From Octopus bimaculoides (Eukaryota), in assembly GCF_001194135.2 (NCBI RefSeq), contig NC_068988.1, positions 34,107,783 through 34,150,783 of the forward strand: 43,001 nucleotides of DNA. The letters run 5' to 3'. Below the pieces are notes generated by a model that was not told the origin of the DNA, searched no databases, and was given only the letters and a program-made list of their open reading frames with translations. This document shows positions 105-36,472 of the stretch, in pieces (position 1 is the stretch's first letter; each line of letters starts with the position of its first letter). The position numbers and the translations under genes are program-made.

Positions 105-2585
105 AGCCCAAATCTGTGACTGGTGCAATGTCCTATCGAGACCTAGTAGAACGATGCGATAGACAGGGTCATTAGAGCTAAGAAACAGGCTTGGAAGGCC
201 TAGACGGATAGGCGTAGCAGGGAACTGTATCAGATTCCATGAAGGGATGCTAGGAAACAAGTATTTCTAACCAAGGGAGAAGCAGAAAAGAAATTTGCCT
301 ATGTTCAGCGACGTGAGGGCCAACGAACTGCAGTGTTTTGCATTGCAAGAGAATGTGAGAGACAAAATCGTGATGTCATAGAGAGAAAGGTGTCCGTATG
401 GCTGATGGTTCGCTTGCATGTAATGATTCTGCAAAAGGAGGCTTGGAAATGCCATTCTGAAAGTCTACTGAACGTAGAGAATGAGTGGCAGCAGGAGAGT
501 CAGCCCAATATTGACCCAATTGAGGGACTTCGACGGTTCTATGACAGATAAAGTAATTAAGGATATGAAGACAGGACAAGCCCTCGGCCCGCTCAGATGC
601 TGAAAATATATGGGGCGATGTGTGTTATCGTCTAGTCACCCGTATTGTACATCAGGTGGTTCACGAAATAGTTATACCCAATGACTGGTGTAAAAGCACA
701 ATAGTCAACTGTTACAAAGGTAAATGTAGGGCCTTAGATTAAAATAACTACTGAGGTATCAAATTGCTGGATCAGGTGATGAAAGTTACAGAGAGTCATA
801 GCCAATCTAATTCGAGAGAGAGTTTCCTTAGATGAGATGCAGTTTAGTTTTGTGCCAAGAAGAAGCACCACTGATGCTGTATTTCCGGTAAGGCAACTGC
901 AGAAGAAATACATAGTCAAAGATAAACTTCTTTACTTAGCCTTTCTTAAGCTCGCGAACGCATTTGACAGGGTCACCCGATCCCTTATCTTGTTGTCAAT
1001 GCGGAAACTACGGATAGACGAGTGGTTGGTGAGAGCTGTACACGCTATGTACAGGTATGCTACCAGTAAGGTGAGAGTTGGCAATGAGTACTGCGAAGAA
1101 TTCAGGGTACAAGCAGGGGTTCACCAAGGATTGGTTCTGAGCCCCCTCTTGTTCATCATAGTCCTCCAGACAATAACAGAGGAATACAAGACAGGCTGCT
1201 CTTATAGCTGAATCATTACCTGAACTAGAAAAGTTCCAGGTATAGAAGCTAGGTCTAGAAACAAAGGGCCTTAGAGTTACCATAGCAAAACCCAAAATCT
1301 TAGTAAGTAAGAAGCAGACAAAGCACAAATCCCTATGTGTAGATGGCCCTGCTCGATCTGTAGAAAACTTGAAGGTAGAAACTCCATAAGATACACCCAT
1401 TGTACACTTTGGACACCTAAAATGTGCAGCAATATCAAAGCTAAAGGTAACAGGGAAACTAGTTTTTGTATGTGGAAGATACACAGATAAAATAAACGCT
1501 GAACATGTGCAGAAAATAGACTCCATCAACTGCCAAAGTGGCAAGTTAGTGGTAGTAGATAGCTTCTGTTATCTAGGTGGCCAAGTTAGTAGTGGAAGTG
1601 GATATTCCGAGAGCGTAGCTGTGAGAATAAGTTTAGGCTGGGCAAAGTTCAGAGAGTTCCGACCCTTGCTGGCAACAAAAGGCCTCTCTCTCAGAGTGCA
1701 AGGCAGCTTGTTTAATACCTGCGCGTGAACAGCTATGCTTTAAAGCAGTGAAACATGACTGTGACAGCTGAGGATATACGTAGGCTTGAAAGAAATGGAG
1801 CCAGTATGCTTCGATGGATGTGCAATTTTAGTGTGCATGTTCGACAGAGTGTAAGCATCTTGTGAGAAAAGTTAGGGATAAGAGGCATCTGATGTGGTGT
1901 GTAAGAGAGACGACTGCACTGGTATGATCATGTGATGCGTATGGACGAGGGTAGTTGTATAAAGAAGTGTCGATCTCTAACTGTGGCGGGATCTTGTGGT
2001 GCAGGTAAACCTAGGAAGACATGGGACGAGGTGGTGGAGTATGTTCTTCGAACATTGAACCTCACAGATGCCAATGTCTAGTAACCGAGACCTTTGGCGA
2101 TGTGCTGTGCTTGAGAGCTCAAGCCAAGTGAATTTGGGCTGGTAGCACGTAAAGAACACTTTTCGAGCGTCAGCCCTCACGGAATCAAAGTAGTTGAGTT
2201 CCTTTCGCGTGTTGGCCCTCACAGAGGCAATGGCCGAGACTTTTGGCATTATGTGGTGATTGAAAAGAAGACACATGAAGCAGAGCAAAATCGCAGTTGT
2301 GGCGGAGACCGGTGTCAGGCATATTAGCACCCGCGCTGGCGGCACGTAAAAGCACTCTGGAAAAACACCCAGGTGTCACGCAAATGGCACCCTTAACGGT
2401 GGTACGTTAAAGCACCCATTATACTCTCGGACTTGTTGGCATGAGGAAGAGCATCCAACCGTAGAAAATCATGCAAAAATCAGACTGGAGTCTGCTGCAG
2501 CATGTCAGCCCGGTCAAAACGTCCAACCCATGCCAGCATGGACAACAGACGTTAACCGATGATGATGCTGAGGATGACGATAATG
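105..2585 (+). mobile_element. 5'-truncated, decayed RTE-clade LINE (RT domain, ORF2 C-terminus, 3' UTR with (GAT)n-like tail)
   Basis: ORF 837-1211 has RTE RT motifs (QFSFVPRRSTTDAVF..QL, AFDRV, DEWLVRAVHAMY, GVHQGLVLSPLLFIIVL). Downstream pieces read VDSFCYLG, RISLGWAKFREF, RWMC, GKPRKTWDEVV. The 3' UTR has three ctggtggcacgtaaaagcac-like motifs (~2140, 2335, 2398) and ends cccatgccagcatgga...gttaaccgatgatgatg. Many stops and frameshifts. Confidence 0.92.
837..1211 (+). pseudogene. Reverse transcriptase fragment of the RTE LINE
   Basis: 124-aa open segment with RT subdomain motifs. The YADD region is missing or deleted right after TGCS. Confidence 0.9.
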
Positions 2586-3491: not shown

Positions 3492-5127
3492 CTGCACAAA
3501 TTTGATATAAATGTAAGGTGTCGTTCTCCTAGTCTTTCTTGCCCGTTCTTTTCTCCTGCTACATATTTCGCTTAATAGCTTAAAATGTAACTTCCCCGCC
3601 TTGATATTCCCTTCTATTAATCGGATCTTCTCAAAGACCCAGAATTAAAATTTCGTTTGATCTGCTAGAAGCCCTCTACAATTTATGCCACGGTCAAACA
3701 TTGCGCTTCAAAAAGAAGCCAAGTTAACTTGTTTTATAGATGTAATGGGTATAATAAAACTTTGAAAATGTTATTGCTGTTTAACTCAAGCAAATCTTCC
3801 ACAAAAACTCAAAAATACTTTTGCAATTCCAAGGCAGATATGAAATATTTCAAGAATATTACACTTTTGTAGCTGCGGCAATATATATGCTAATAGGTAC
3901 GTGTTCCTATATATTCGTATGTGCGTGTGTGTGTATACGCATGTATGTATATACGTAGGTATGTATGGAGGCATGTACGTGTATATTTATATATAAATAT
4001 ATATATATATANNNNNNNNNNNNNNNNNNNNNNNNNNNNNNNNNNNNNNNNNNNNNNNNNNNNNNNNNNNNNNNNNNNNNNNNNNNNNNNNNNNNNNNNN
4101 NNNNNNNNNNNNNNNNNNNNNNNNNNNNNNNNNNNNNNNNNNNNNNNNNNNNNNNNNNNNNNNNNNNNNNNNNNNNNNNNNNNNNNNNNNNNNNNNNNNN
4201 NNNNNNNNNNNNNNNNNNNNNNNNNNNNNNNNNNNNNNNNNNNNNNNNNNNNNNNNNNNNNNNNNNNNNNNNNNNNNNNNNNNNNNNNNNNNNNNNNNNN
4301 NNNNNNNNNNNNNNNNNNNNNNNNNNNNNNNNNNNNNNNNNNNNNNNNNNNNNNNNNNNNNNNNNNNNNNNNNNNNNNNNNNNNNNNNNNNNNNNNNNNN
4401 NNNNNNNNNNNNNNNNNNNNNNNNNNNNNNNNNNNNNNNNNNNNNNNNNNNNNNNNNNNNNNNNNNNNNNNNNNNNNNNNNNNNNNNNNNNNNNNNNNNN
4501 NNNNNNNNNNNNNNNNNNNNNNNNNNNNNNNNNNNNNNNNNNNNNNNNNNNNNNNNNNNNNNNNNNNNNNNNNNNNNNNNNNNNNNNNNNNNNNNNNNNN
4601 NNNNNNNNNNNNNNNNNNNNNNNNNNNNNNNNNNNNNNNNNNNNNNNNNNNNNNNNNNNNNNNNNNNNNNNNNNNNNNNNNNNNNNNNNNNNNNNNNNNN
4701 NNNNNNNNNNNNNNNNNNNNNNNNNNNNNNNNNNNNNNNNNNNNNNNNNNNNNNNNNNNNNNNNNNNNNNNNNNNNNNNNNNNNNNNNNNNNNNNNNNNN
4801 NNNNNNNNNNNNNNNNNNNNNNNNNNNNNNNNNNNNNNNNNNNNNNNNNNNNNNNNNNNNNNNNNNNNNNNNNNNNNNNNNNNNNNNNNNNNNNNNNNNN
4901 NNNNNNNNNNNNNNNNNNNNNNNNNNNNNNNNNNNNNNNNNNNNNNNNNNNNNNNNNNNNNNNNNNNNNNNNNNNNNNNNNNNNNNNNNNNNNNNNNNNN
5001 NNNCATACATACATATATATACAGGTATAGACATTTGTGAGTATATATATATATATATAGATATATATATACATACACACAAACATATATATATACTTGC
5101 ATACAAAAATATATACACGCACGTGTG

Positions 5128-6027: not shown

Positions 6028-6561
6028 CTCTTAGAGTATTAATAACTCCTCTGGAAAGAACTTCCATATACACCCATCCACCACATACAGAACTGACACG
6101 CACGCGCCCAGCAAATTTTTAAAATATAAACAGCTTTCAAAACGCAACGAATAACGTTGGTGCCAGGGACCATGTACGTATGGGAATATTTGTGTATACA
6201 TATATGTATGTATGTACGTATGTGTGAGGGTATATATATATGTATATTTCCCCCTCACATGTGGTGGCAGTGACTGTTGACGTACATCTGGATACACATA
6301 TGCACTCATCTATGTATGCTTTTGTATCCATAGATATCTAAGTATGGTTATAGACACAGGCACAGACATGTGTATTGGAGTGTCTAAAACTATTTATATG
6401 GTCTTATATACTGTTTGTAGGCATTTTATGTGCCTTATATTTTTATATTTTCATTTCTTCATTTATTTTTATTTTTACAGCATTCTTATTTTTATTTTTA
6501 TTTATTTTTTAATTTTTATTATAATTTTAATTTTTACTTTATATTTGTGTTGAATTTTTGT

Positions 6562-6696
6562 GAATCTCTGAAGAGGCCTAGCGAATCATGCATGTACCCC
6601 CATTACAGCACTTCATCTGCTAATTACTCCGGCACGCAGGAGCTATAGGGATAGAATGGGGCATGCCAACGCTAGGCCGAAACAGCTGTAAGATTC
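6562..6696 (+). ncRNA. Type I hammerhead ribozyme with extended, branched stem II
   Basis: Stem I gaatct (6562-67) / agattc (6691-96). Core CTGAAGA (6568-74). Stem II ggcctagcg (6575-83) / cgctaggcc (6670-78), perfect 9 bp. GAAA (6679-82). Palindromic stem III ACAGCTGT (6682-89). Cleavage triplet GUA, cut after 6690. All conserved core positions are present. Confidence 0.9.
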
Positions 6697-6984
6697 TGTA
6701 TAGTCTCCTATTGCTAAATGTACTTTATATTTGTAACCTTAACTGTTAATATGACACGGAATGGCATAAGCATCTGTATATTGTGTTTTTTGTCATTTTA
6801 GTTACAAATTAAGTAAATTAATTCAATGGAATACACTGTCTGCAAATCGATGGATACCGCATATTCTCCTCTATTTTCTTATTGCTAAATAAATTTAGGG
6901 TAAAATAACCCCCTTTTACCCGCACCCACTTATTACACTTGGTATAACACTAGTGTAACAATAATTGGGTACCCTCCCAGCAGT

Positions 6985-7246
6985 ATTTTTTGTTTGTTTG
7001 TTGGCCCTCCGTCGCTTACGACGTCGTGGGTTCCAGTTGATCCGATCAACGGAACAGCCTTCTCGTGAAATTAACGTGCAAGTGGCTGAGCACTCCACAG
7101 ACACGTGTAACCTTAACGTAGTTCTCGGGGATATTCAGCGTAACACAGTGTGACAAGGCTGACCCTTTGAAATACAGGTACAACAGAAACAGGAAGAAAG
7201 AGTGAGAGAAAGTTGTGGTGGAAGAGTACAGCAGGGTTCGCCACCA
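6985..7246 (-). mobile_element. SINE-like dispersed repeat, 3' part (5' end lost in gap)
   Basis: The minus strand ends ...gatcggatcaactggaacc...gtcgtaagcgacggagggccaacaaacaaacaaaaaa, a GC-rich body plus A-rich tail typical of a retroposed short element. The family assignment is from recall, not searched. Confidence 0.6.
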
Positions 7247-7860
7247 NNNNNNNNNNNNNNNNNNNNNNNNNNNNNNNNNNNNNNNNNNNNNNNNNNNNNN
7301 NNNNNNNNNNNNNNNNNNNNNNNNNNNNNNNNNNNNNNNNNNNNNNNNNNNNNNNNNNNNNNNNNNNNNNNNNNNNNNNNNNNNNNNNNNNNNNNNNNNN
7401 NNNNNNNNNNNNNNNNNNNNNNNNNNNNNNNNNNNNNNNNNNNNNNNNNNNNNNNNNNNNNNNNNNNNNNNNNNNNNNNNNNNNNNNNNNNNNNNNNNNN
7501 NNNNNNNNNNNNNNNNNNNNNNNNNNNNNNNNNNNNNNNNNNNNNNNNNNNNNNNNNNNNNNNNNNNNNNNNNNNNNNNNNNNNNNNNNNNNNNNNNNNN
7601 NNNNNNNNNNNNNNNNNNNNNNNNNNNNNNNNNNNNNNNNNNNNNNNNNNNNNNNNNNNNNNNNNNNNNNNNNNNNNNNNNNNNNNNNNNNNNNNNNNNN
7701 NNNNNNNNNNNNNNNNNNNNNNNNNNNNNNNNNNNNNNNNNNNNNNNNNNNNNNNNNNNNNNNNNNNNNNNNNNNNNNNNNNNNNNNNNNNNNNNNNNNN
7801 NNNNNNNNNNNNNNNNNNNNNNNNNNNGTGTTTTGAAATCAGAGAACATTTTCTGTATTT

Positions 7861-8226
7861 TTTTATTCTTTTACTTGTTTCAGTCATTTGCTTGCGGCCA
7901 TGCTGGAGCACAGCCTTTAGTCGAGCAAATCGACTTATTCTTTGTAAACCTAGTACTTACTCTAGCGGTTTCTTTTGCCGAACCTTTAAGTTACGGGGAC
8001 GTAAACACACCAGCATCGGTTGTCAAGGGATGGCGGGAACACACACACACACACATATATATACGACGGGCTCCTTTCAGTTCTCGTCTGCCAAATCCAT
8101 TCACAAAGCTTGGTCGGCCCGAGGCTATAGTAGGAGACAGTTGCCCAAGGTGCCACGCAGTGGGACAGGACCCCAAAGCATGAGGTTAGTAAGCATGCTA
8201 CTTCCCACTCAGCCACTCCTGTGCCT
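7861..8226 (-). mobile_element. Octopus-type tRNA-derived SINE, near full length
   Basis: tRNA-like head (ggctgagtgggaag...cccactgcgtggcacc), internal CA/TA microsatellite, body ttgacaaccgatgctggtgtgtttacgtccccgtaac, tail gactgaaacaagtaaaagaataaaa. Alignable by eye to other copies in this window. Confidence 0.88.
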
Positions 8227-9605
8227 GTATATATATGTTTTTCCGTGAATGGGTCTAAGTTTTGATTGGTTATCATTCTGATGGCATCTTATTCTTTTGG
8301 TGGATGTTTTTGATGAAAAAATAGATTTTGTTTTGGCGTTGGTTGGTTGTTTGGTCGGTCGGTAAGTTGGTTGGTTGGTTGTATATAGAAANNNNNNNNN
8401 NNNNNNNNNNNNNNNNNNNNNNNNNNNNNNNNNNNNNNNNNNNNNNNNNNNNNNNNNNNNNNNNNNNNNNNNNNNNNNNNNNNNNNNNNNNNNNNNNNNN
8501 NNNNNNNNNNNNNNNNNNNNNNNNNNNNNNNNNNNNNNNNNNNNNNNNNNNNNNNNNNNNNNNNNNNNNNNNNNNNNNNNNNNNNNNNNNNNNNNNNNNN
8601 NNNNNNNNNNNNNNNNNNNNNNNNNNNNNNNNNNNNNNNNNNNNNNNNNNNNNNNNNNNNNNNNNNNNNNNNNNNNNNNNNNNNNNNNNNNNNNNNNNNN
8701 NNNNNNNNNNNNNNNNNNNNNNNNNNNNNNNNNNNNNNNNNNNNNNNNNNNNNNNNNNNNNNNNNNNNNNNNNNNNNNNNNNNNNNNNNNNNNNNNNNNN
8801 NNNNNNNNNNNNNNNNNNNNNNNNNNNNNNNNNNNNNNNNNNNNNNNNNNNNNNNNNNNNNNNNNNNNNNNNNNNNNNNNNNNNNNNNNNNNNNNNNNNN
8901 NNNNNNNNNNNNNNNNNNNNNNNNNNNNNNNNNNNNNNNNNNNNNNNNNNNGTGTAACTTCAATCATGAAGGATTGCGAGAGCAGATATTTTTATTAACA
9001 CAATATACAATTCTTTCATTGAAATTCATCTTCATGAATATTATGTATATTATGTAGTAATATATGCAGCGATGAACTAAAGAAATCTCGAAAGCAACTC
9101 ATCAGAAATATGCATAAAAGTCATTTGCCGTAGATACTTGAATTACCAATAATTCATACCTATATTGACTTAGGAGTGTATAATTGAATAAATTTGCGGA
9201 TAAGAAGCGAATCAAAACAAGCTACTGGTTTGAATTAACCGGTCAAAACAACCAAGAAGAGAGCAAAAGAACTTAAATTGAGAAACACGTATTACTGTCC
9301 GTCCGATAGCGTGTACTCGTCGACGGGCTCCATGGGGTAAACTCCAGATTTAATAACCGAATGAAATTATATATCTGTGCACGTAAGTATGTATGCATAA
9401 TGTATATACATATAAACATACATATACAATATATATCGAGTGCTTGCAACATCGGGTGCATCGCTAGCCAGCTCTAGCTCTAGGGGATCCTCCTGGAATT
9501 AAAGGCGGTAGTAACGTCCATTCCTATCGAGCAGCCATACTGATGTGGCAATAGGCATTGCTTCTCAGTATAGTTACTACTTTCATCTCTTATAGAGATT
9601 TCCTA

Positions 9606-10080: not shown

Positions 10081-10478
10081 TTATTAGTATTTCTAAATTT
10101 CTCTAAAGGAGACTACGGTAGCAGTACTGGGTATTAATAGTCATGGCCGAACTAACATGGCAGTCCAGAAAAATAGGACGAATGCTGCTGTTGATTAGCT
10201 GCAAGAGGCCATCGCCTCCAGTTAGCTATCTGACACACAAACGTGTGTCCATTACAACCTTCGAACAAAGGGAGCCATTAGCTTCTCCATGCTGGTTCGA
10301 ACAACCGCAAACCAGTTTCGGGGTATTTGCCCCTTATCAATATGAGGTAGCCCAACCCAGCAGGCGTCGCTGTTGACAGTTCCTATTCTTCTGGACTGCC
10401 ATGTTTCCTTGGCGATAACTATTGATACCCAGTACTGCTGCCGTAGTCTTCTTTAGAGAGATTTAGAAATAATAATAT
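10081..10478. mobile_element. ~400-bp element with ~98-bp imperfect inverted terminal arms
   Basis: 10081-10178 aligns to the reverse complement of 10381-10478 (tttctaaatttctctaaaggagactacggtagcagtactgggtattaatagt...aacatggcagtccagaaaaatagga). TA dinucleotides at 10088-89 and 10470-71 flank the tttctaaa/tttagaaa ends. Confidence 0.8.
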
Positions 10479-10499: not shown

Positions 10500-11112
10500 G
10501 ATGTGTTCCACTGAATATATATAAAACCAGTTTATCCACATTCTCCTTTGAGCATTTGCTAACAAAATCCAGTGCTCCAATTATAACTGATATGAATATG
10601 AATTCATAGTCTGGATATAGAAGCTCGAGGTCTCGAAGCTGTTGTCCATTGATATCCTTTTTTCTTTGATTTTCAAAGAGATATTTATATATGCAGAGCA
10701 GCTAACCTCTGTGATGTTGCATACCTTTGCTGCTCTGTGCCAAACAACAGCCAGCCTGTTATGCTACCATTTGACAGAGGTTTTGATAAGAATATTCCAC
10801 TAGTATTGCTTGAGTTGATGTTTATGAATCATAACAGGGGGATATTTTAAGTTTATTTCAGGATAGTCTTTTTTGCAGATGGCATTGTAGATTGTTTTAG
10901 CAAAAACATTGTGCCACATAGGAAAGTAGTACTGTGACGACATTTTAGTATAGCTGCCAATCACATGCGTGATGTTTTCCACAGAAACATGACATAGCCT
11001 ACACATGCAGTTGTACTATAGGATTATAAGAGCATCTCTGTCTCTCTTGTTCACCAGGTACTTTGTGGCAATCTCCTCTGCCTGGATTGCAAACGCATAA
11101 CCTTCAAAGTAT
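10500..11112 (-). mobile_element. R4/Dong-like (restriction-like endonuclease) non-LTR retrotransposon 3' remnant, copy 1
   Basis: Minus strand reads EGYAFAIQAEEIATKYL, the CCHC-type finger CRLCHVSVENITHVIGS, HNVFAKTIY, and a decayed RLE region (WNILIKTSVK..HNR..VV, EVSC, YPDYEFIFISVIIGAL). Confidence 0.85.
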
Positions 11113-11115
11113 GAC

Positions 11116-14100: not shown

Positions 14101-14139
14101 TACTTTCTGATGAAGAGCGTAGGCTTGAAACGTAAAGTA
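14101..14139 (+). ncRNA. Minimal type I hammerhead ribozyme (Penelope-type), slightly decayed
   Basis: tacttt-CTGATGA-A-gagc(gtag)gctt-GAAA-CG-T-A-aagta. Core intact, extra A after A9, stem II closed by G.U, 4-nt palindrome ACGT as stem III, stem I of 5 bp with one bulge. Confidence 0.72.
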
Positions 14140-14221: not shown

Positions 14222-14999
14222 AGAAAGAAAGAGAGAGAGGGAGGAAGAAAATGAAAGGGATACAAAAATGACACATCAGCCGGTAGACATTCTATTGTCT
14301 ATTTATTCTAAAACATAAGGAAGTATTATAAGAATGCATACACATGCAAAGACTATATGTTACACACATATCTACTAGTAATACATGAAATAGTAAAAGA
14401 TCAGTTCCTTACGTTTCTTTCAAGAGGCCACGATATCCTCTATGCTATCTCCATTACTTCAGTGTTCTGTAGAGATGGGTAGATAAAGTTTGGACGATGA
14501 GTTTGCCGCCAGGCCTCATCAGAGGTTATAAATGGTTAGGAGAGCCAATACATACAAGAATCAGTTACCAATAGGTACAGTATATTTTTCTTATTGAAGA
14601 GGTCATAAGAAGAATAGGAGCAAAACTTAGTGTGTGAGAGGAGTACAACTTAGTAAAATAGATTAGATATAGGAAAGGAAAATAAGTAATAGATTCCAGT
14701 GTTGCCTTCCAAGATTCATGTTATTTTGTCCAGTATATTGGATAGGTACTATCCCTTAGTTGGTGGCCTCCCCAATCTCTAACTCTCACAGAGGAGTCGA
14801 TGCTAGATGTGTCGAAACAATTGTTGAGATTAATAATATATTCTCGTATATGCCATCATCTGCCTTTCATTTGCTATATATATATATATATATATATACC
14901 AGAGTAAGCACATAAATGTGAAATAAGGTAGAAAAAAAGCAATAAAATACCATATATATATATATACATTTATATATATTGCTCCCAAATATGGTCCCC

Positions 15000-15552
15000 A
15001 GAGAGTGTGAAACAAACTGTGGAACTCGAAGCAATACACAAAGAAGATTGACTCGATGCAAAAGATGGGCTACCGAGAGAGGCTAAATGAGCTGAGTCTC
15101 TATTCTCTGGAGAGAAGACGAGAGAGATATGCGGTGATATGTATTTGGAAGATCTTGAGGAGTTTAGCTCCCAATTTGGGAATTAACAACTATATCAATC
15201 CTCGAACTGGACGGTTCTACATCATACCAATGGTCCCGTCTACTCCATCTAAAATAAGGACACAGTGCTGCACTAGTCTGGGTTTCAAGGGCACGCAATT
15301 GTTCAACATCCTGCCAGGCAACCTTAGAGATTTACATGGTGTTGATGTGGAAGTTCTCAAGGAACGTCTGGACAGGTTTCTGAGATACCAGATGAACACA
15401 CATCGGGGCAGGAAACACGGAGAAGAGCAGGTCCGTCCAGCTCGCTACTTCATCAAAAGCAATACCGGAAACAACACCGAATAACCACAGGCGGTGCACC
15501 AGCATGATCTCAGCCCTAGGTTAAAACCAGTAAATGATAAAAGATAAAGATA
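15000..15552 (+). mobile_element. CR1/L2-group LINE 3' end (ORF2 C-terminus + short tail)
   Basis: ORF 15056-15484: YRERLNELSLYSLERRRERYAVICIWKIL...SLGFKGTQLFNILP..LRDLHGVDVEVLKERLDRFL is the typical CR1-group post-RT region. It is followed by a gataaaa-type tail. Confidence 0.85.
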
Positions 15553-16010: not shown

Positions 16011-16933
16011 TACTATTGAACCTTGGGAGAGGTATTATGCCGGTAATAATAAACACACGCACTAGTTCGGCCCTTTATTGATATTGTTAGTTAAAGATTT
16101 AATTACTCCGTTCGCCAATTTTTCTATCAGCCGTTTTTTAAACTCGTGTTAAACACTTTGGTCAAACAGGTAATCAGAAATATGCATAGAGAAGTACACA
16201 CGCACACACAAACACAGAGGAACTCACACACCTGAATGCAAACAGATATACCCAAACATACACACACATAAAGACACACTGAAACACAAACACACACTCA
16301 CATACACGCAAACACAGACACACACGCTCGTACACACATGGACACGCGCACGCATACGCATGCTCACGCACAGATAATTTATTCAACATTTAACAAACAA
16401 AGAAGACGGTGTAACTGTCTTTGAGAGAAACGTTACATGGATGAACGTGTGCGTTTGCGAAGAGAACAAAGAGAAAACCAAAACCGCTGTCTTATGTATA
16501 TGAAACATGGCATAGTCAGTATTTAAAACACGCATACGGATGCACACACTTATGTATAAACGCACACGCATGCAGACATACACACACTCATACTCGTCTC
16601 GGACAGATCTCGGACGAATCCCAACACTGGAACATAAGTTCAAAACAAATGGAAGTAGAGAGATGTGTCACTGAAGAGATTGCAATAATGCGATGAAATA
16701 ATTATTTGACAAAAAAAAAAACGAAATCACAGCACTAGCAATTCTGATCATTTGAACGATTAACTGTTTGAACAAAGTTTAACATGTGAGCTTGAAAACC
16801 TAATAACAAAACGTCTGATCAATAAATTGGTTAACAGAGTAACTAGCCTATTAACTAACAATAATAATAAAGGACCGAACCAGTGCGTGTGTTTATTATT
16901 ACCTGCATAAACCCCCTCCCAAAGTTCAATAGC
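16011..16933. mobile_element. Non-autonomous DNA transposon-like element (~920 bp) with long (~160 bp) imperfect TIRs
   Basis: 16011-16094 is a close reverse complement of 16851-16933 (ctattgaaccttgggagagg.attatgccggtaataataaacacacgcactagttcggccctttattgatattgttagttaa). Weaker similarity continues inward to ~16170/16764. No internal transposase ORF. Confidence 0.82.
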
Positions 16934-18139: not shown

Positions 18140-18211
<72 letters not shown>

Positions 18212-18212
<1 letters not shown>

Positions 18213-18389
18213 CTCTTTATACTTTACTCTTTTACTTGTTTCAGTCATTTGACTGCGGCCATGCTGGAGCACCGCCTTTAGTCGAGCACATCGACCCCAG
18301 GACTTCTTCTTTGTAAGCCTAGTACTTATTCTATCGTTCTCTTTTGCCGAACCGCTAAGTTTCGGTGAGGTAAACACACCAGTATCGGT
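18212..18389 (-). mobile_element. tRNA-derived SINE, 3' half
   Basis: cttttacttgtttcagtcatttgactgcggccatgctggagcaccgcctttagtcgagc...gccgaaccgctaag aligns with the 7861 copy. Confidence 0.88.
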
Positions 18390-18899
18390 ACACACACACA
18401 CACACACTTATATATATATATATAATAGAAATAGGTTTCAAAGATAAAAGACACTACACGTGGTAAATATATGGGGAAATTAAGAAGCAAAAGCGAAAAT
18501 GCACATTGGATATAAAAAATAAGGCTTTTTTATGAAAAGTAATGATAAATATATACAATTAAATGAACTGAGGTAGAATTAAGTGGAATAAAAGTCATTA
18601 TTTTGAATTGGTAAGTCATACCGGTATCGTCAATTGCTGTTCACTGGCATTGAATGCGCAACGGTTACCAAACGGTGTCCCTGAGTAAAAAGATTGTATG
18701 CAAGGGAGGTAAGCAGTTTTGGTGTGGTGCTATTAGAGTAGATATAATACTGTAATTTGAATGATGTATGGAATGTATCGGAATTAGTGGTATTAATGGT
18801 AAGATTAGTAGTGTTTCTTTTTTATTATGTTAAGTGTTCATGTTGTGTTGTGGATGATATTTATTGATGAAGTTGCTTCTTTATTCATTCTTTGCTGAA

Positions 18900-26223: not shown

Positions 26224-26258
26224 ATGTATATATATATACATATATACATAAATACATG

Positions 26259-26413
26259 CGACGGACTTCTTTCAGCGTCTGTCTAAGAAATCCCCTCACA
26301 ATCCTTTTGTCGGCCCGAAGCTATGGTAGAAGACACTTGTCCAAAGTGTCACACAGTGGAACTGAACAAGTAACCATGTGGTTGGAAAGCAAGTTTCTTA
26401 CCACACAGCCACG
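26259..26413 (-). mobile_element. tRNA-derived SINE, 5' half
   Basis: Reverse complement begins cgtggctgtgtggtaagaaacttgctttccaaccacatgg...gttcagttccactg. Confidence 0.85.
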
Positions 26414-26469: not shown

Positions 26470-27420
26470 ATAAATACATAAATGATAGACTTTTGGAGAG
26501 TTTTGCAGATTTTTACAATTCCACTCACAGATTGCACTTGTAACGTACGAATTAGCCGGTCAGTTTCTCTTGCTGAAAATCCCCGTTTATCCAGATTCTC
26601 CTTTAAGCATTTACTAACAAAATTCATAGTCTGGATATACAAGCCGGAGGTTTCGAAGCAGTTGTCCTTAGACATCCTCTTTTACTTTGAGTTTGAAAGA
26701 GCTATTTATACCTGCAGGGCAGCTAAACACCATGACGGTACATACCTTTGCAGCTGTGTCCCGAATAACAATATCCTGCTTATTTTTATATTATACAGAA
26801 GCTTTGATAGGAATATTCCACCAGTATTTCTTGAGCTGGTATTTATGAATGTATTTCAAAGGAGAGGGATTTTCTAAGTTTATTTCAGGATAGTCTTTTT
26901 TGCGGATGGCACTGTAAATTGTTTTAGCAACAACATCGTGCTGCATAGGGTGGTAGTACCTCGACGACATTTTAGTACAGCTGCTAATCACATACGTGAT
27001 GTCTTGCACAGAAACATTACATGGCCTACACATGCAATTGTACTATGGGATTACAAGAGCCTCACTGTCTCTCTTGTTCACCAGATATTTTGTGGAAATC
27101 TTCTGTTCTTGGATTGCCAACGCATAGCCTTCAAATTTTGATATAATGTAGTGGTCGTGTGTCTAAGAGAGGCTGCGCTTAGTGTCAATTCTACTATCTT
27201 CTTCAAGGTTCCGGGCAACATACCCTTGAATCTTTTATTTTTTTTGTATGTTGAGTGCTTTCCATCCAGATCTTCTCTGAGGTAAGAGAGCCTAGCTGTT
27301 TTAGCGCTGTATAGGAAATCATATGGAAGAGAGTGCTTCTTGAGGAGTTCACTGCTTACGCGTATAATGTTGCTCACATCACTTTTCAGCACTATATTTA
27401 TATATTTATTTGTGCTGCTG
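26470..27420 (-). mobile_element. R4/Dong-like RLE non-LTR retrotransposon 3' remnant, copy 2
   Basis: EGYALAIQEQKISTKYL, CRPCNVSVQDITYVISSC..HDVVAKTIY, WWNIPIK, NKQDIVI (PD motif), FSCP, YPDY, SVSGIVKICKT. Same family as 10500-11112, with a ~35-nt deletion near 26621. Confidence 0.88.
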
Positions 27421-27502: not shown

Positions 27503-28318
27503 CTATATATTATTATTATTTTAAAATTTTATTTAAGTTCTTGAAAGACCTCAAGGCGATCGGTAACAAAACAAAGACTTTTATAGTGAAGAGAGCTTCT
27601 GTAGTTTGTAGATATGTGCTTGAGTTGGTGTGTTAGTTGACCTGTCGATGCATACACTCAAGTGTGCGCATCTAATCACATAGGAATCTCAGGTGGAGGA
27701 TTCTTGAACTTTCTTACAAATTTTCCCTGTTCCAATAATAGATTGGGTTTGGAGAAACCATGATTCTTTTTAATTATTTTTTCTTTCTCCGACAAACTGA
27801 GTATTTCTAGTTTTATGTACAAATTTGTTGCAACATAACTTAATGGACCTATGATGATAGGTGCAAATGAGAATTCATAGTCAGGTTACAAGACATGTAA
27901 GGTCCGCATATGCATGTAGGTCTGTATGTATGTATGTGCGTATGTGTGTGTGTATCTATATATATGCTTGTCTGTGTACATATACATGCGTACGTACATA
28001 TGAATTATACATATAATCACAAACACACACATATACACAAGGACACACATTTACAAAGAAAATGTGGACAGCGACATCGAAGCTTTGTCGATCGTAACCC
28101 CCATCAGGTCATAATTTGCGAGATGAGGTTAAAGATTATTTAAAAACTTCTGCTTTACCATTTAGGTGTGACTTAGTGCTTGTAATGTATGTGTTGTTTA
28201 ATAAAGTATTTTGAGACATAAATTACAATTCTTGTGTGGGTGAGCGTAGAATGGCATTTTCATATGTATACTCCTATATTAATACATGGTATACGACTTT
28301 TCAATAAATGTACATAGA

Positions 28319-28455
28319 AAAAGAAGAAGAAGAAGAAGAAGAAGAAAAAGAAGAAGAAGAAGAAGAAGAAGAAGAAGAAGAAGAAGAAGAAGAAGAAGAA
28401 GAAGAAGAAGAAAAAGAAGAAGAAGAAAAAGAAGAAGATGATGATGATGATGATT

Positions 28456-28487
<32 letters not shown>

Positions 28488-28637
28488 AACGATGATGATG
28501 ATGACGATGATGAGGAAGATGATGAAGAAGATGATGATGATGATGATGATGATGGTGATGGTGGTGATGATGGTGATGATGATGATCATCATGATCATGA
28601 TCATGATGATGATAATAATGATGATCATGATGATGAT
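28319..28637. repeat. Compound (GAA)n then (GAT)n trinucleotide array
   Basis: Direct reading; ~120 bp GAA followed by ~200 bp degenerate GAT. Confidence 0.96.
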
Positions 28638-29353
28638 GAAGGAGAAGACGTTACATACACACTAAGTCCAATGATTGGCGAAACTTCAAAGTCACTGTCA
28701 ACAATTTCCTTGTAACGATAAACATGATATTCAATTCAAATATATTGAGTGATCCTTCAACAGAAGAGACAAAATGTTGCAAGATGTTATAAAAGCAGGA
28801 AACAGATGTGGTAAAAAAAAAAGCAATACAATAGTTATTTCGTTTTTTTTTTTTTTAATTCACCAAATCGTAATAGTCTATTACTAATTTGTGTTAAATT
28901 TTCCTTGGTTTTTTATTTATTTATTTATTTATGTATATACTTATTTATTTATTTATTTATGTATATACTTATTTATTTATTTATATTATGTTTGCAGCTG
29001 GCTATGCCTCACTTATACAAATGTAAGTGTTTAACATTATCACCAATTTTCTTGATTCTTGAGAATCTATTGCAGAAATAAGATTCTGAAACACCTTTCG
29101 TAGACAAAATATTGAGTTGGGAAGTGTGTTTTCTTTTTTCCTTTTTTTCTTTTTCGGTAATTATTTTGTTTTTCATTCAGTTATTCGTATTTTCTTTAGT
29201 TACAGCAAAGCAAAATTCTAAATTGGTATGGTAAAGAATAATGGAGAAGGAAAATAGTTATTTTCATTTCTAGTATATCTCTAAGTCTTCATTACTGAGA
29301 TGTACTAAAAGGTATAGAATATAACGTATATACACATACCTACATATGTGTAT

Positions 29354-34702: not shown

Positions 34703-35717
34703 TANNNNNNNNNNNNNNNNNNNNNNNNNNNNNNNNNNNNNNNNNNNNNNNNNNNNNNNNNNNNNNNNNNNNNNNNNNNNNNNNNNNNNNNNNNNNNNNN
34801 NNNNNNNNNNNNNNNNNNNNNNNNNNNNNNNNNNNNNNNNNNNNNNNNNNNNNNNNNNNNNNNNNNNNNNNNNNNNNNNNNNNNNNNNNNNNNNNNNNNN
34901 NNNNNNNNNNNNNNNNNNNNNNNNNNNNNNNNNNNNNNNNNNNNNNNNNNNNNNNNNNNNNNNNNNNNNNNNNNNNNNNNNNNNNNNNNNNNNNNNNNNN
35001 NNNNNNNNNNNNNNNNNNNNNNNNNNNNNNNNNNNNNNNNNNNNNNNNNNNNNNNNNNNNNNNNNNNNNNNNNNNNNNNNNNNNNNNNNNNNNNNNNNNN
35101 NNNNNNNNNNNNNNNNNNNNNNNNNNNATATATATACATACATACATATATATATGCATACATATATACATACATACATACATTTATATATGCTCATTAA
35201 TTTATAGTTTATATAGCTGATATTAATGAGCTAACGATGTATATTACCATAGACCATTTTGCTTCGAAGAAGTTGTACATAACACGGAATAAATAGAGTA
35301 TCGAAAATAATTCCAGATCAAACGTAGATGTCAAAAACAATAAAAATGTTAACAACAAACATGAAACCAACAACAATGTGATTGTTCGAAAAGGAGAGCA
35401 TTTGGATCATTTTACACTATTAGAGCCAACAACCTTTAGCTTATACATTCACAAAACAAGATGGCATTTCTATTTAGCTAAGAAAGAAGACTCATGCTAC
35501 GTAAGAAATAATTCAATTACGAACTATGCAGGTGTACTGTCTAGAATTTAGCAATCTATCTTCGAGAACCACTTGTAGTTCAGACATATTTGTCCTACCA
35601 TTACACGTGAGTGCAAGGACAGGAACATGACGTGTGTGAGTTTTGAGTTGTGAGTATGGAATGTGTGTGTCTGTGTGCGTGTGCATTTGTGTGTATGTAT
35701 ATATGAATGTGTATATA

Positions 35718-35896
35718 CTCTTTAATTCTTTAATTCTTTTACTTGTTTCAGTCATTTGAATGCGACCATGCTAGAGGACCGCCTTGAAATGATTTTAGTC
35801 GAACAAATCAATCCCAGGACGTAAACACACCAACACCGTTTGTCAAGCAATGTTGGGGGGGGGGGAGAACCACAGATACAAAACAAACACACATAA

Positions 35897-36083: not shown

Positions 36084-36472
36084 GCGTGGCTGTGTAGTAA
36101 CACGCTTGCTTCCCAGCTATGTGGTTTCAGGTTCAGTCCCACTGCGTGGTACCTTCGACATGTATCTTCTTCTGTAGTCCTGGACCGATCAAAGCCCTGT
36201 GAGTGGATTTCGTAGTCCAAAACTGAATAAGAAGCCCATCGTGTGTGTGTGGGGGGGGTCTGTTTGTTACCCTACCACCGCTTGACAACCGATGCTGGTG
36301 TGTTAATCTCCCGTAAATTAGCGGCTCGGCGAAAGAGACCGACAGAATAAGTGCCGGATTTAAAAAATAAGGACTAGGATCGATATATTCAACTAAAAAT
36401 TCTTCAAGGTGCTGCCCCAGCATGACCGCAGTCTGGTGTCTGAAACAAATAAAAGATAAAAGATAAAAGAAA
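36084..36472 (+). mobile_element. tRNA-derived SINE, full length
   Basis: Head gcgtggctgtgtagtaa...ggttcagtcccactgcgtgg (B-box-like), body ttgacaaccgatgctggtgtg, tail (ataaaag)n. Confidence 0.9.

What the first reader, a model, noticed from the sequence alone, without database searches (positions are those of the whole stretch)
6562..6696. Intact hammerhead ribozyme whose stem II carries a cloverleaf-like four-way junction
Seen: every conserved hammerhead core base is present (CUGAAGA / GAAA / GUA), with a perfect 6-bp stem I and a perfect 9-bp stem II. Stem III is the 8-nt palindrome ACAGCUGU. In place of a short loop II there is an 86-nt insert (6584-6669) that folds by eye into a closing helix (gcatg 6590-94 / catgc 6662-66 and ccccatt 6598-6604 / aatgggg 6655-61) bearing three hairpins: agca/tgct (6607-21), ctcc/ggag (6627-42) and ctat/atag (6643-54). 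That is a tRNA-like cloverleaf on top of the ribozyme. Established: metazoan type I hammerheads with palindromic stem III occur in Penelope-like elements and retrozymes and can cleave as dimers. Inference: this is a young or conserved, probably active self-cleaving RNA with an extra structured domain (ligand/protein-binding, processing or RT-recruitment module). It sits in a non-coding element with no nearby ORF.
Basis: partly seen in the sequence, partly recalled or inferred. Interest (0 to 1): 0.88.

Follow-up and report, generated by a model that had tools for sequence, protein, structure and literature searches.

The report
Intact hammerhead ribozyme, long stem II
This is a real, intact self-cleaving hammerhead RNA motif of the kind carried by small animal retroelements, with an unusually long arm on stem II, but the "tRNA-like cloverleaf" on that arm folds no better than random sequence.

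Summary
The motif at 6562-6696 (+) is a complete type I hammerhead:
- core CUGAAGA / GAAA / GUA, with the G10.1-C11.1 pair;
- a 6-bp stem I and a 9-bp stem II;
- an 8-nt palindromic stem III.

It is far beyond chance. A strict descriptor expects 0.003 hits per shuffled window even with much shorter stems.

The 86-nt insert is real. Only its base is non-random: a 5+7-bp closing helix that extends stem II (9 of 1000 shuffles match it). The three-hairpin top is not supported. The inner 50 nt fold no better than shuffles (z = -0.10), and two hairpins have pairing probability of about 0.5. ARAGORN and Rfam find no tRNA or known RNA there.

Stem III and the GAAAC/GUA core match published retrozyme hammerheads from coral, mussel and axolotl. 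Cofolding two copies gives the classic double hammerhead.

The 50% GC motif sits in 22-33% GC flanks between exact 14-nt direct repeats. This fits a solitary ~172-bp copy of a hammerhead-bearing non-autonomous retroelement. At least one other good hammerhead lies in the window.

No related copy could be retrieved, so conservation of the insert is untested. I rate it an ordinary kind with an unusual stem II.

The parts
6535..6548 (.). Upstream copy of the exact 14-nt direct repeat TACTTTATATTTGT. Candidate target-site duplication, or a repeat-unit boundary.
   Evidence: family D12. A shared word of 14 nt or more between the 80-nt flanks occurred in 0 of 1000 shuffles.
6549..6720 (+). Putative inserted element of 172 bp and 46% GC. 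It consists of the hammerhead plus 13 nt on the 5' side and 24 nt on the 3' side.
   Evidence: Bounded by the 14-nt direct repeats. GC is 0.50 in the hammerhead against 0.22-0.33 in the flanks; the whole element is 0.46.
6562..6567 (+). Stem I, 5' strand GAAUCU. It pairs with 6691-6696.
   Evidence: pairing probability 0.96-1.0.
6568..6574 (+). Conserved core CUGAAGA (C3-A9).
   Evidence: descriptor hit.
6575..6583 (+). Stem II, 5' strand GGCCUAGCG. It pairs with 6670-6678 and begins with G10.1-C11.1.
   Evidence: pairing probability 0.99-1.0; -18.2 kcal/mol as an isolated hairpin.
6584..6669 (+). 86-nt insert in place of loop 2. Helix IIa (6590-94 / 6662-66) and helix IIb (6598-6604 / 6655-61) extend stem II. 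One firm 4-bp hairpin lies at 6627-42. The rest has no significant structure.
   Evidence: The closing 12 bp are matched by 9 of 1000 shuffles. The inner 50 nt give z = -0.10. Hairpins 1 and 3 have p of about 0.5.
6670..6678 (+). Stem II, 3' strand CGCUAGGCC.
6679..6682 (+). Conserved core GAAA (G12-A15.1).
6682..6689 (+). Stem III, the 8-nt palindrome ACAGCUGU. In a monomer it gives 2 bp plus an AGCU loop. In a dimer it gives an 8-bp intermolecular helix.
   Evidence: Cofolding gives the double hammerhead at -100.9 against 2 x -47.3 kcal/mol. The palindrome duplex alone is -11.1 kcal/mol.
6690..6691 (+). Predicted cleavage site, GUA|A. N17 is A6690.
   Evidence: Position in the motif; follows the RUH rule quoted in the supplement of PMC7229834.
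6691..6696 (+). Stem I, 3' strand AGAUUC.
6691..6720 (+). 3'-terminal segment 'E' (…ATTCTGTATAGTCTCCTATTGCTAAATG). It recurs in diverged form at 6862-6890.
   Evidence: family D9. The local alignment score of 14 was reached by 1 of 500 shuffles.
6721..6734 (.). Downstream copy of the 14-nt direct repeat.
6862..6890 (+). Segment E' (ATTCTCCTCTATTTTCTTATTGCTAAAT), similar to the element's 3' end. It may be a 5'-truncated second copy or the end of a second unit.
   Evidence: The interiors 6549-6695 and 6735-6862 are unrelated (323 of 500 shuffles reach the score).

Best explanation
The locus is a solitary (monomeric) genomic copy of a small, non-autonomous, hammerhead-bearing retroelement. It is of the metazoan non-LTR retrozyme / Penelope-like-element (PLE)-derived kind. 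It is about 172 bp long and was inserted into AT-rich DNA with a 14-bp target-site duplication.

Shown here: the RNA would carry a complete type I hammerhead.

Inferred:
- When two copies meet, either in tandem transcripts of sister loci or between molecules, the palindrome ACAGCUGU forms an 8-bp helix III. Each core then cleaves after A6690, leaving a 2',3'-cyclic phosphate and a 5'-OH.
- In tandem arrays this releases unit-length RNA that host RNA ligase can circularise and a PLE or LINE reverse transcriptase can copy back into DNA.
- The 86-nt insert is not a tRNA-like module. It is a rod-like continuation of stem II (9+5+7 bp) capped by about 50 nt of weakly structured sequence. It forms most of the element's body and stiffens stem II.
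- Loop 2 is displaced and stem I has no internal loop or extension, so the usual loop1-loop2 tertiary contact is absent. The ribozyme should therefore behave like a minimal hammerhead: slow at physiological Mg2+ and dependent on dimerisation, on protein help, or on both.
- At this single-copy locus it probably has no host function.
For: - The core and helices are intact and non-random.
- It meets the motif criteria used by the field, CUGANGA / GAAAY / RUH with perfect helices (supplement legend of PMC7229834).
- Helix I of 6 bp and helix III of 2 bp with a palindromic tetraloop match the 'canonical metazoan type I' description (PMC4209133).
- Published retrozyme hammerheads show the same pattern: axolotl Ax353 has GAAACACGUGUA|, mussel Mg353 has ACGCGCGU, and coral Amil224 has GGCC…GGCCGAAACAG..CUGU.
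- Cofolding predicts the double hammerhead.
- The hammerhead is a GC-rich island of 0.50 in flanks of 0.22-0.33, between exact 14-nt direct repeats (0 of 1000 shuffles).
- Retrozyme target-site duplications are reported as longer than 4 bp (PMC7229834). Retrozyme consensus lengths run from 51 to 972 bp, and dispersed monomers are common (bioRxiv 10.64898/2026.07.22.740005).
- PLEs insert preferentially into microsatellites (PMC8557442). This site follows a T-rich simple repeat.
- The window holds further hammerhead motifs: 16666-16711, with a PLE-style bulge after A9 and the palindrome AUAAUUAU, plus decayed ones. Such elements are therefore common in this genome.
- The flanks do not extend stem I, and stem II is stable on its own.
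Against: - No second copy of this element was found, in the window or in any searchable collection. Family status and mobility are inferred from one locus.
- It is not in a tandem array, which is the defining arrangement of retrozymes.
- No PLE ORF (RT plus GIY-YIG) was seen among the ORFs tested. The RT fragments present look LINE-like, with RVT_1 and Exo_endo_phos hits. Assembly gaps at 4012-5003 and 7247-7827 hide the wider context.
- The E/E' similarity is not explained by a simple single insertion with a target-site duplication.
- Rfam hammerhead models do not hit it. A covariance model built from four published retrozyme hammerheads gives only a partial 7.4-bit match. Both are expected with a 104-nt interruption but remain negative results.
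- A stem II this long is not described for retrozyme or PLE hammerheads in the papers read.
Confidence: 0.6

Rival explanations
1. The insert is a selected, structured accessory domain on stem II, with a cloverleaf or four-way junction. It binds a ligand or protein, or recruits a reverse transcriptase or processing enzyme. The ribozyme is either a conserved functional RNA or a new retrozyme subclass built around this domain.
For: The closing helices IIa and IIb are perfect and unlikely by chance (9 of 1000 shuffles). All 27 pairs of stems I, II, IIa and IIb are Watson-Crick. The minimum-energy fold does show a four-way junction. In one PLE studied in vitro, the hammerhead cleaved only when the element's protein was present (PMC11167929), so protein-ribozyme contacts exist in this world.
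Against: The junction region is no more stable than shuffles (z = -0.10), and two of its three hairpins have p of about 0.5. ARAGORN finds no tRNA. Rfam gives no hit of E<=10 to any tRNA-like, aptamer or other family. No pol III A or B box is closer than 3 mismatches. The 9-bp GC-rich stem II isolates the core from the distal domain, so allosteric control through stem II is mechanically implausible. There is no comparative evidence at all.
Confidence: 0.1
2. The insert is a private accident of this copy. An unrelated hairpin-forming sequence (a small foldback or inverted-repeat fragment, or a template switch during reverse transcription) landed in loop 2 of an otherwise canonical 4-bp-stem-II retrozyme hammerhead (GGCC-loop-GGCC). 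It was tolerated because the copy is not under selection.
For: The base of stem II (GGCC/GGCC) followed by GAAACAG…CUGU is the same as in the coral retrozyme hammerhead, which has only a 5-nt loop there. The insert's ends form an imperfect inverted repeat (GCATG-TAC-CCCCATT / AATGGGG-CATGC). Elements flanked by inverted repeats are present elsewhere in the window.
Against: Stem II continues perfectly for 5 more pairs (UAGCG/CGCUA) beyond GGCC before the insert starts, which a random insertion into a loop would not create. No duplication flanks 6590-6666 (AATCAT against CAA). The insert sequence is not repeated anywhere else in the window.
Confidence: 0.2
3. The locus is the collapsed or decayed edge of a tandem (satellite-like) array with a unit of about 186 bp. 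The 14-nt repeat marks a unit boundary rather than a target-site duplication, and short-read assembly or decay has left one good unit.
For: The layout is DR14-X1-E-DR14-X2-E', with spacings of 186 and 171 nt. The similarity between E and E' is non-random (1 of 500 shuffles). Retrozymes are typically tandem (PMC7229834). The assembly is gap-rich.
Against: The interiors of the two 'units' are unrelated (323 of 500 shuffles reach the score). The second unit has no trace of a hammerhead core. Uniform decay cannot leave one unit perfect and erase the other. Fourteen nt is too short to be an assembler overlap artefact.
Confidence: 0.08
4. The match to the hammerhead consensus is a chance one, with no biological origin as a ribozyme.
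For: Hammerhead-like motifs do arise by chance in large genomes (PMC3088659). The relaxed descriptor gives 0.05-0.3 hits per shuffled window.
Against: The strict descriptor gives 0.0033 hits per window at stems >=4/4/2. This motif has stems of 6/9/4 Watson-Crick pairs. Scaling by 0.25 per extra pair gives about 1e-8 per window, which is my extrapolation. It also has G10.1-C11.1, GAAAY, RUH and a palindromic helix III, none of which the descriptor demanded.
Confidence: 0.01

Closest known systems
Canonical type I hammerheads of metazoan non-LTR retrozymes (coral Amil224, mussel Mg353, axolotl Ax353 and Ax330; PMC7229834)
   Same: The core is CUGANGA / GAAAC / GUA|. Helix I is 6 bp. Helix III is a 6-10-nt palindrome giving 1-3 bp plus a short loop, and is dimer-capable. 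The G10.1-C11.1 pair is present. The base of helix II (GGCC/GGCC) is identical to the coral motif. The element is small (about 172-186 bp), below 50% GC, and flanked by a direct repeat longer than 4 bp.
   Different: Helix II is 9 bp and continues into an 86-nt arm, instead of 4 bp plus a 5-6-nt loop. There is no loop 1 or upper stem I, so the usual tertiary contact is missing. There is a single copy rather than a tandem array. A covariance model built from the four published motifs does not recover it, giving only a 7.4-bit partial match.
Minimal hammerheads of Penelope-like elements (min-HHR in pLTRs; PMC4209133)
   Same: Helix II is longer than usual (7-8 bp there, 9 bp here). Loop-loop tertiary contacts are absent. 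Positions 15.2-16.2 and loop 3 are palindromic. A dimeric mode of action is expected. The insertion lies in simple-repeat DNA.
   Different: There is no unpaired nucleotide between A9 and G10.1. Helix I is 6 bp rather than 4-5 bp. No pLTR/RT/GIY-YIG context was detected in the readable flanks. PLE motifs have short loops on helix II. The neighbour at 16666-16711 fits this class much better.
Discontinuous hammerhead in mammalian Clec2 3' UTRs (review PMC6155905)
   Same: It is a natural hammerhead in which one helix is interrupted by a long extra sequence without disturbing the core.
   Different: There the long interruption (150-1500 nt) is in helix I of a type III motif inside an mRNA, and is conserved between species. 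Here it is 86 nt in helix II of a type I motif in repeat DNA.
Engineered allosteric hammerheads (aptazymes) with an aptamer grafted on stem II (review PMC2777235)
   Same: The topology is the same: a structured domain replaces loop 2.
   Different: Aptazymes need a short, marginally stable stem II or communication module. Here stem II is nine stable pairs (-18.2 kcal/mol), and no known aptamer is detected.
Schistosome Sm-alpha / Sj-alpha SINE-like retroposons carrying a hammerhead (Ferbeyre et al. 1998 and Laha et al. 2000, cited from my own knowledge and not re-read here)
   Same: They are short non-autonomous retroposons whose RNA contains a type I hammerhead. They occur both dispersed and in tandem.
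   Different: Those elements carry a pol III (tRNA-type) promoter and a canonical short helix II. Here no A or B box and no tRNA-like region are found.

Membership tests
Hammerhead ribozyme (class) | Conserved core C3-U-G-A-N-G-A9 and G12-A-A-A15.1 | tested here: met
   CUGAAGA at 6568-74 and GAAA at 6679-82.
Hammerhead ribozyme (class) | A15.1-U16.1 pair, an N-U-H cleavage triplet, and the G10.1-C11.1 pair at the base of helix II | tested here: met
   A6682-U6689; GUA at 6688-90; G6575-C6678.
Hammerhead ribozyme (class) | Three helices radiating from the core | tested here: met
   Stem I is 6 bp and stem II 9 bp, both with p >0.96. Stem III is 2 bp in a monomer and 8 bp in the predicted dimer.
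Hammerhead ribozyme (class) | A match to the curated covariance models (Rfam Hammerhead families) | tested here: not met
   There is no hit at gathering score or at E<=10 on 6300-7000. This is explained at least partly by the 86-nt insert. Rfam also fails to call the compact motif at 16666-16711, so the test has low power for this type.
Hammerhead ribozyme (class) | Site-specific self-cleavage | not testable with these tools
   This needs in vitro transcription and a cleavage assay.
Canonical metazoan type I HHR / non-LTR retrozyme | Helix I of about 6 bp, open-ended (type I) | tested here: met
   6 bp, with the 5' and 3' ends leaving through stem I.
Canonical metazoan type I HHR / non-LTR retrozyme | Helix III of 1-2 bp capped by a 2-4-nt palindromic loop (PMC4209133) | tested here: met
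   A-U and C-G pairs plus an AGCU loop; ACAGCUGU is a perfect palindrome.
Canonical metazoan type I HHR / non-LTR retrozyme | Helix II of about 4 bp, with a loop 2 that contacts loop 1 of helix I | tested here: not met
   Helix II is 9 bp plus an 86-nt arm. There is no internal loop or upper stem in helix I.
Canonical metazoan type I HHR / non-LTR retrozyme | Tandem repeats of about 170-400 bp | tested here: inconclusive
   There is one full unit. Direct repeats lie 186 nt apart and there is a diverged copy of the 3' end 171 nt downstream, but the second 'unit' has no hammerhead. Dispersed monomers are known for the family.
Canonical metazoan type I HHR / non-LTR retrozyme | Sequence and structure similarity to published retrozyme hammerheads (covariance model R1, built from coral, mussel and two axolotl motifs) | tested here: not met
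   Only a 7.4-bit partial hit at 6663-6690 (E = 6.7). The insert is heavily penalised, so this result has limited weight.
PLE minimal hammerhead | An unpaired nucleotide between A9 and G10.1, helix I of 4-5 bp, helix II of 6-8 bp | tested here: not met
   There is no bulge, helix I is 6 bp and helix II is 9 bp or more.
PLE minimal hammerhead | Location in a pseudo-LTR next to an RT + GIY-YIG ORF | tested here: inconclusive
   No such ORF is present among the 20 ORFs scanned. Only RVT_1 and Exo_endo_phos hits of LINE type were found, all far away. Gaps at 4012-5003 and 7247-7827 limit the view.
tRNA / tRNA-like cloverleaf | Recognition by a tRNA detector or by the Rfam tRNA or tRNA-like models | tested here: not met
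   ARAGORN finds 0 genes in the window. Rfam gives no hit of E<=10 in 6300-7000 other than a 16-bit snoRNA noise match.
Riboswitch / aptamer-coupled ribozyme | A recognisable aptamer domain, coupled to the core through a labile helix | tested here: not met
   Rfam finds no aptamer family. The connecting helix is stable by itself at -18.2 kcal/mol.

The most novel reading that the evidence does not exclude
The long stem II arm is a conserved feature of a so far undescribed family of small hammerhead retroelements in this animal lineage. In that family most of the element's body is nested inside helix II. The arm would serve as a protein- or reverse-transcriptase-recruitment platform, or as a stability platform for the circular RNA. 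That would make it a natural hammerhead with a functional accessory domain on stem II.
Probability: 0.1. Interest if true: 0.6.

Novelty: new member of a known kind. Interest (0 to 1): 0.3.

Why it matters
Type I hammerheads are already known in very large numbers in animal repeat DNA (retrozymes and Penelope-like elements). Another intact copy is therefore not surprising in itself.

What is unusual is the architecture: a perfect 9-bp stem II running into an 86-nt arm, with no loop1-loop2 contact.

If sister copies show that this arm is conserved, two things follow. It would define a new retrozyme subfamily, and it would give a natural test case for how much peripheral RNA a hammerhead tolerates on stem II. 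It would also show that standard tools miss such motifs, since Rfam models and a model built from published retrozyme ribozymes both failed to call it.

If the arm is private to this copy, the locus is just a young, slightly odd retroelement insertion.

Tried and rejected
1. Rfam at gathering score on the whole window, and at E<=10 on 6300-7000, gave no hammerhead, tRNA or aptamer hit. Rfam also misses the compact motif at 16666-16711, so a negative result is weak evidence.

2. ARAGORN found no tRNA.

3. I tried to fish for other copies in several ways:
- Self-BLAST and mismatch searches in the window found none.
- A concatenated six-frame peptide query of the element against 5.8 billion predicted proteins found none.
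- Exact-protein look-ups of the overlapping 72-aa ORF and of an RT ORF found nothing on record.
- A 19-mer of the 3' half in the metagenome, viral and prokaryote genome collections gave 4 hits. All lacked an upstream core and were chance matches.
- A 16-mer of the 5' half in viral contigs gave 4 chance hits, and a gapped pattern for a long-stem-II hammerhead gave none.
- Full-text sequence search of papers found none.
- Supplements of the retrozyme papers contained no cephalopod or matching sequence.

4. I tried to identify the organism from an RT ORF. The best hits were at most 44% identical on long ENA contigs, or 56-62% on contigs under 1 kb. One 21-kb ENA locus that I fetched has 44% GC, no hammerhead and only distant LINE similarity. 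The source genome and its close relatives therefore seem absent from the collections.

5. Covariance model R1, built from four published retrozyme hammerheads, found other motifs in the window but only a partial hit here.

6. No pol III A or B box of the SINE type is closer than 3 mismatches.

7. I looked for an extension of stem I, or a pseudoknot partner for the internal loop AAUCAU, in the flanks and found none (and inspection).

8. I considered the insert as a miniature inverted-repeat element and rejected it, because no flanking duplication and no other copy exist.

9. I considered homology between the two adjacent 'units' and rejected it for their interiors.
Full report
**Setting.**
The window is eukaryotic draft assembly. 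It has 31% GC, 14 runs of N, abundant (TA)n and (CA)n microsatellites, and a CpG observed/expected ratio of 0.89. It carries scattered reverse-transcriptase fragments with Pfam RVT_1 and Exo_endo_phos hits and several interspersed repeat families. I could not identify the organism. The best protein relatives of an RT ORF are at most 44% identical on long ENA contigs and 56-62% on very short ones. One ENA locus that I fetched is clearly from a different genome.

**The observation.**
Reading 6400-6860 confirms every coordinate in the finding:
- stem I GAAUCU (6562-67) / AGAUUC (6691-96);
- CUGAAGA (6568-74);
- stem II GGCCUAGCG (6575-83) / CGCUAGGCC (6670-78), starting with G10.1-C11.1;
- GAAA (6679-82);
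- the 8-nt palindrome ACAGCUGU (6682-89);
- the triplet GUA, with N17 = A6690;
- an 86-nt insert (6584-6669).

**Is the hammerhead more than chance?**
I wrote an RNAmotif-like descriptor: CUGANGA, an optional bulge, stem II, up to 160 nt, GAAA, stem III, UH, stem I. I ran it on both strands of the window and on 300 dinucleotide-preserving shuffles.
- With Watson-Crick pairs only and stems >=4/4/2, shuffles give 0.0033 hits per window.
- With G-U allowed, shuffles give 0.053 hits per window.
- With stems >=3/3, shuffles give 0.32 hits per window.

The real motif has stems of 6, 9 and 4 pairs (stem III counted as a palindrome). Scaling by 0.25 per additional pair puts its expectation near 1e-8 per window. 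That is far below one even for a genome of several Gb. This scaling is my inference.

The motif also satisfies features the descriptor did not demand: G10.1-C11.1, GAAAY, RUH and a palindromic helix III. Specialists use these features to separate real motifs from noise (PMC4209133; supplement legend of PMC7229834). The hammerhead is real.

**Is the cloverleaf more than chance?**
It is not.
- The insert alone folds at -23.7 kcal/mol against -19.95 +/- 3.09 for shuffles (z = -1.21; 22 of 200 shuffles fold as well).
- Pairing probabilities are above 0.87 for helices IIa and IIb, apart from IIb's last pair at 0.70. They are 0.97 for the CUCC/GGAG hairpin. They are only about 0.5 for AGCA/UGCU and about 0.46 for CUAU/AUAG.
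- The centroid structure drops hairpin 3 entirely and keeps only two pairs of hairpin 1.
- The 50 nt inside the closing helix fold at -8.2 kcal/mol against -7.98 +/- 2.09 for shuffles (z = -0.10). On their own they do not even adopt the three-hairpin fold.
- ARAGORN finds no tRNA in the window.
- Rfam at E<=10 finds nothing in 6300-7000 except a 16-bit snoRNA noise hit on the other strand.

What is non-random is the closing helix. Twelve pairs join the two ends of the insert, and 9 of 1000 shuffled inserts match that.

The defensible description is a stem II prolonged to an interrupted rod of 9+5+7 bp, capped by about 50 nt that hold one credible 4-bp hairpin.

**What kind of hammerhead is it?**
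Published descriptions say most metazoan hammerheads are type I. They have helix I of 6 bp, helix II of 4 bp with loop-loop contacts, and helix III of 1-2 bp capped by a 2-4-nt palindromic loop. That helix III makes them work as dimers (PMC4209133).

The constructs tested by Cervera and de la Peña give concrete comparators:
- coral Amil224: …CUGAUGA GGCC AGAAA GGCC GAAA CAGUACUG UC|;
- mussel Mg353: …GAAA CGCGCG UC|;
- axolotl Ax353: …GAAA CACGUG UA|;
- axolotl Ax330: …GAAA CAUG UC|.

The motif here reads CUGAAGA GGCC[…]GGCC GAAA CAGCUG UA|. It has the same helix I length, the same kind of palindromic helix III, the same GAAAC/GUA, and the same first four pairs of helix II as the coral motif.

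Cofolding two copies gives the textbook double hammerhead, with an 8-bp intermolecular helix III and exchanged stems I. Its energy is -100.9 kcal/mol against -94.6 for two monomers. A hypothetical head-to-tail dimer folds the same way.

It differs from the canonical type in three ways.
- Helix II is 9 bp plus the arm.
- There is no loop 1 or upper stem I. With the hammerhead constrained, the flanks fold on themselves and do not extend stem I.
- Consequently the usual loop1-loop2 tertiary contact, needed for fast cleavage at physiological Mg2+ (PMC3088659), is absent.

In this respect it resembles the 'minimal' hammerheads of Penelope-like elements (PLEs). Those have long helices II (7-8 bp), no tertiary contacts and poor activity in vitro. 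It lacks their hallmark unpaired base after A9 and their shorter helix I.

The curated models do not call it. Rfam gives nothing. A covariance model that I built from the four published motifs gives only a 7.4-bit partial match at 6663-6690. That model does pick up 16665-16712 (15.2 bits). Rfam also misses that compact motif. I therefore treat these negatives as a limit of the models when faced with a 104-nt interruption, not as evidence against the core.

**Genomic anatomy.**
- The hammerhead is a 50% GC island in 22-33% GC DNA.
- It is bracketed by an exact 14-nt direct repeat, TACTTTATATTTGT, at 6535-48 and 6721-34. No shuffle of the 80-nt flanks shares a word of 14 nt (0 of 1000; the maximum was 12).
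- The simplest reading is a 172-bp insertion (6549-6720, 46% GC) with a 14-bp target-site duplication, next to a T-rich simple repeat.
- This agrees with what is reported for these elements. Retrozyme target-site duplications are longer than 4 bp. Unit lengths run from 51 to 972 bp and dispersed monomers are common. PLEs prefer microsatellite targets.

One detail does not fit a single clean insertion. The last ~28 nt of the element (ATTCT-GTATAGTCTCCTATTGCTAAAT) recur, diverged, at 6862-90. One of 500 shuffles reaches the alignment score. The sequence between is unrelated to the hammerhead (323 of 500 shuffles reach that score). This may be a 5'-truncated second insertion of the same family, or the remains of a second unit. 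I cannot decide which.

No pol III A or B box is present; the best matches have 3 mismatches. No ORF with a Pfam hit lies within about 5 kb. Gaps at 4012-5003 and 7247-7827 bound the readable context.

**Other hammerheads in the window.**
The descriptor and the model reveal several further motifs.
- 16666-16711 (+): UGUCA CUGAAGA g AUUGCA AUAA UGCGAU GAAA UAAUUA U U|UGACA. This is a well-formed PLE-style minimal hammerhead, with a bulge after A9, a 6-bp helix II and the palindrome AUAAUUAU.
- 14104-14137 (+): a weak minimal motif.
- 10304-10348 (-): hammerhead-like with core mutations, 17.2 bits.
- 14783-14830 (+): hammerhead-like with core mutations, 13.1 bits.

Two well-formed motifs were observed where 0.053 was expected. 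Hammerhead-bearing repeats are therefore a regular component of this genome, which makes a retroelement origin for the motif under study the economical explanation.

**Mechanism.**
Shown:
- an intact core with three helices;
- a palindrome that can form the dimeric helix III;
- a stem II that is stable on its own (-18.2 kcal/mol when capped with GAAA);
- direct repeats flanking a compact GC-rich unit.

Inferred:
- transcripts cleave after A6690, mainly when two copies pair, or with help from element-encoded protein (one PLE hammerhead needs this in vitro; PMC11167929);
- in tandem loci this yields unit-length RNA that is circularised and reverse-transcribed (the model of PMC7229834);
- the arm is structural ballast that forms the element's body;
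- this solitary copy is probably inert for the host.

A ligand-gated switch through stem II is unlikely. Engineered stem-II aptazymes depend on a weak connecting helix (PMC2777235), and here nine GC-rich pairs insulate the core.

**Limits.**
No relative exists in the window. Every route into the public collections returned nothing or chance matches. The judgement on the arm therefore rests on single-sequence thermodynamics and on analogy.

**Verdict.**
The hammerhead is real and intact and belongs to a well-known kind, the type I motifs of small animal retroelements. The extended stem II is real and unusual. The 'cloverleaf' and its proposed functions are not supported. I score interest at 0.3. 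I keep a 0.1 probability that the arm is a conserved accessory domain defining a new subfamily.

Noticed in passing
window 16666-16711 (+), inside 16013-16932: A second well-formed hammerhead of the PLE 'minimal' type: stem I UGUCA/UGACA, CUGAAGA, a bulged G, a 6-bp stem II with an AUAA loop, GAAA, the palindrome AUAAUUAU, and cleavage at AUU|. It is followed by an A-run. It lies between ~125-nt inverted repeats (16013-16137 / 16808-16932, 82% identity). Rfam does not call it. My model R1 gives 15.2 bits.
   Followed up: partly
window 10304-10348 (-), inside 10082-10477: A hammerhead-like sequence with a decayed core: UUGAUAA in place of CUGAUGA, then GGGG-CAAAUA-CCCC and GAAAC. It scores 17.2 bits (E = 0.009) with model R1. 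It also sits between ~97-nt inverted repeats (10082-10178 / 10381-10477, 88% identity). The same 'inverted repeats around a hammerhead' layout occurs at 16.0-16.9 kb.
   Followed up: partly
window 14104-14137 (+) and 14783-14830 (+): Two weak or degenerate hammerhead-like motifs. The first has CUGAUGA, a bulged A, GAGC/GCUU, GAAA, CG and UA|, with only a 3-bp stem I. The second has CAGAGGA in place of CUGANGA and the palindrome ACAAUUGU (13.1 bits). Either could be a relic or chance. The 13-mer CGTAGGCTTGAAA of the first also occurs at 1779-1791.
   Followed up: partly
window 7848-8236, 18171-18416, 26256-26413, 35672-35820, 36084-36474, 41537-41725, 42308-42670: An interspersed repeat family of about 150-390 bp in both orientations, at 69-80% identity (SINE-like). 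The sequence just downstream of the hammerhead locus (about 6985-7246, running into a gap) also looks like a repeat with tRNA-like GGTTC motifs.
   Followed up: no
window 10601-11114 and 26621-27141: A 520-bp direct repeat pair at 82% identity, of unknown nature.
   Followed up: no
window 837-1211 (+), 15056-15484 (+), 30810-32802 (-), 38847-40734 (+): Non-LTR retrotransposon fragments. RVT_1 hits lie at 837-1211, 32103-32567 (-) and 40180-40734. A weak Exo_endo_phos hit lies at 39004-39501. 32222-32596 and 39695-40074 are inverted copies at 69% identity. The 15056-15484 ORF has a CR1/L2-like C-terminal motif by eye (…LSLYSLERRRERY…) but no Pfam hit.
   Followed up: partly
window 28260-28715: A long homopolymer and trinucleotide tract. 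It reads as poly-Phe/Ile on one strand and poly-Glu/Asp on the other in the ORF list. It is low-complexity DNA rather than a gene.
   Followed up: no
window 6430-6648 (+): A 72-codon ORF overlaps the 5' half of the hammerhead. It has no Pfam hit, no exact match on record and a low-complexity N-terminus. I treat it as spurious.
   Followed up: yes
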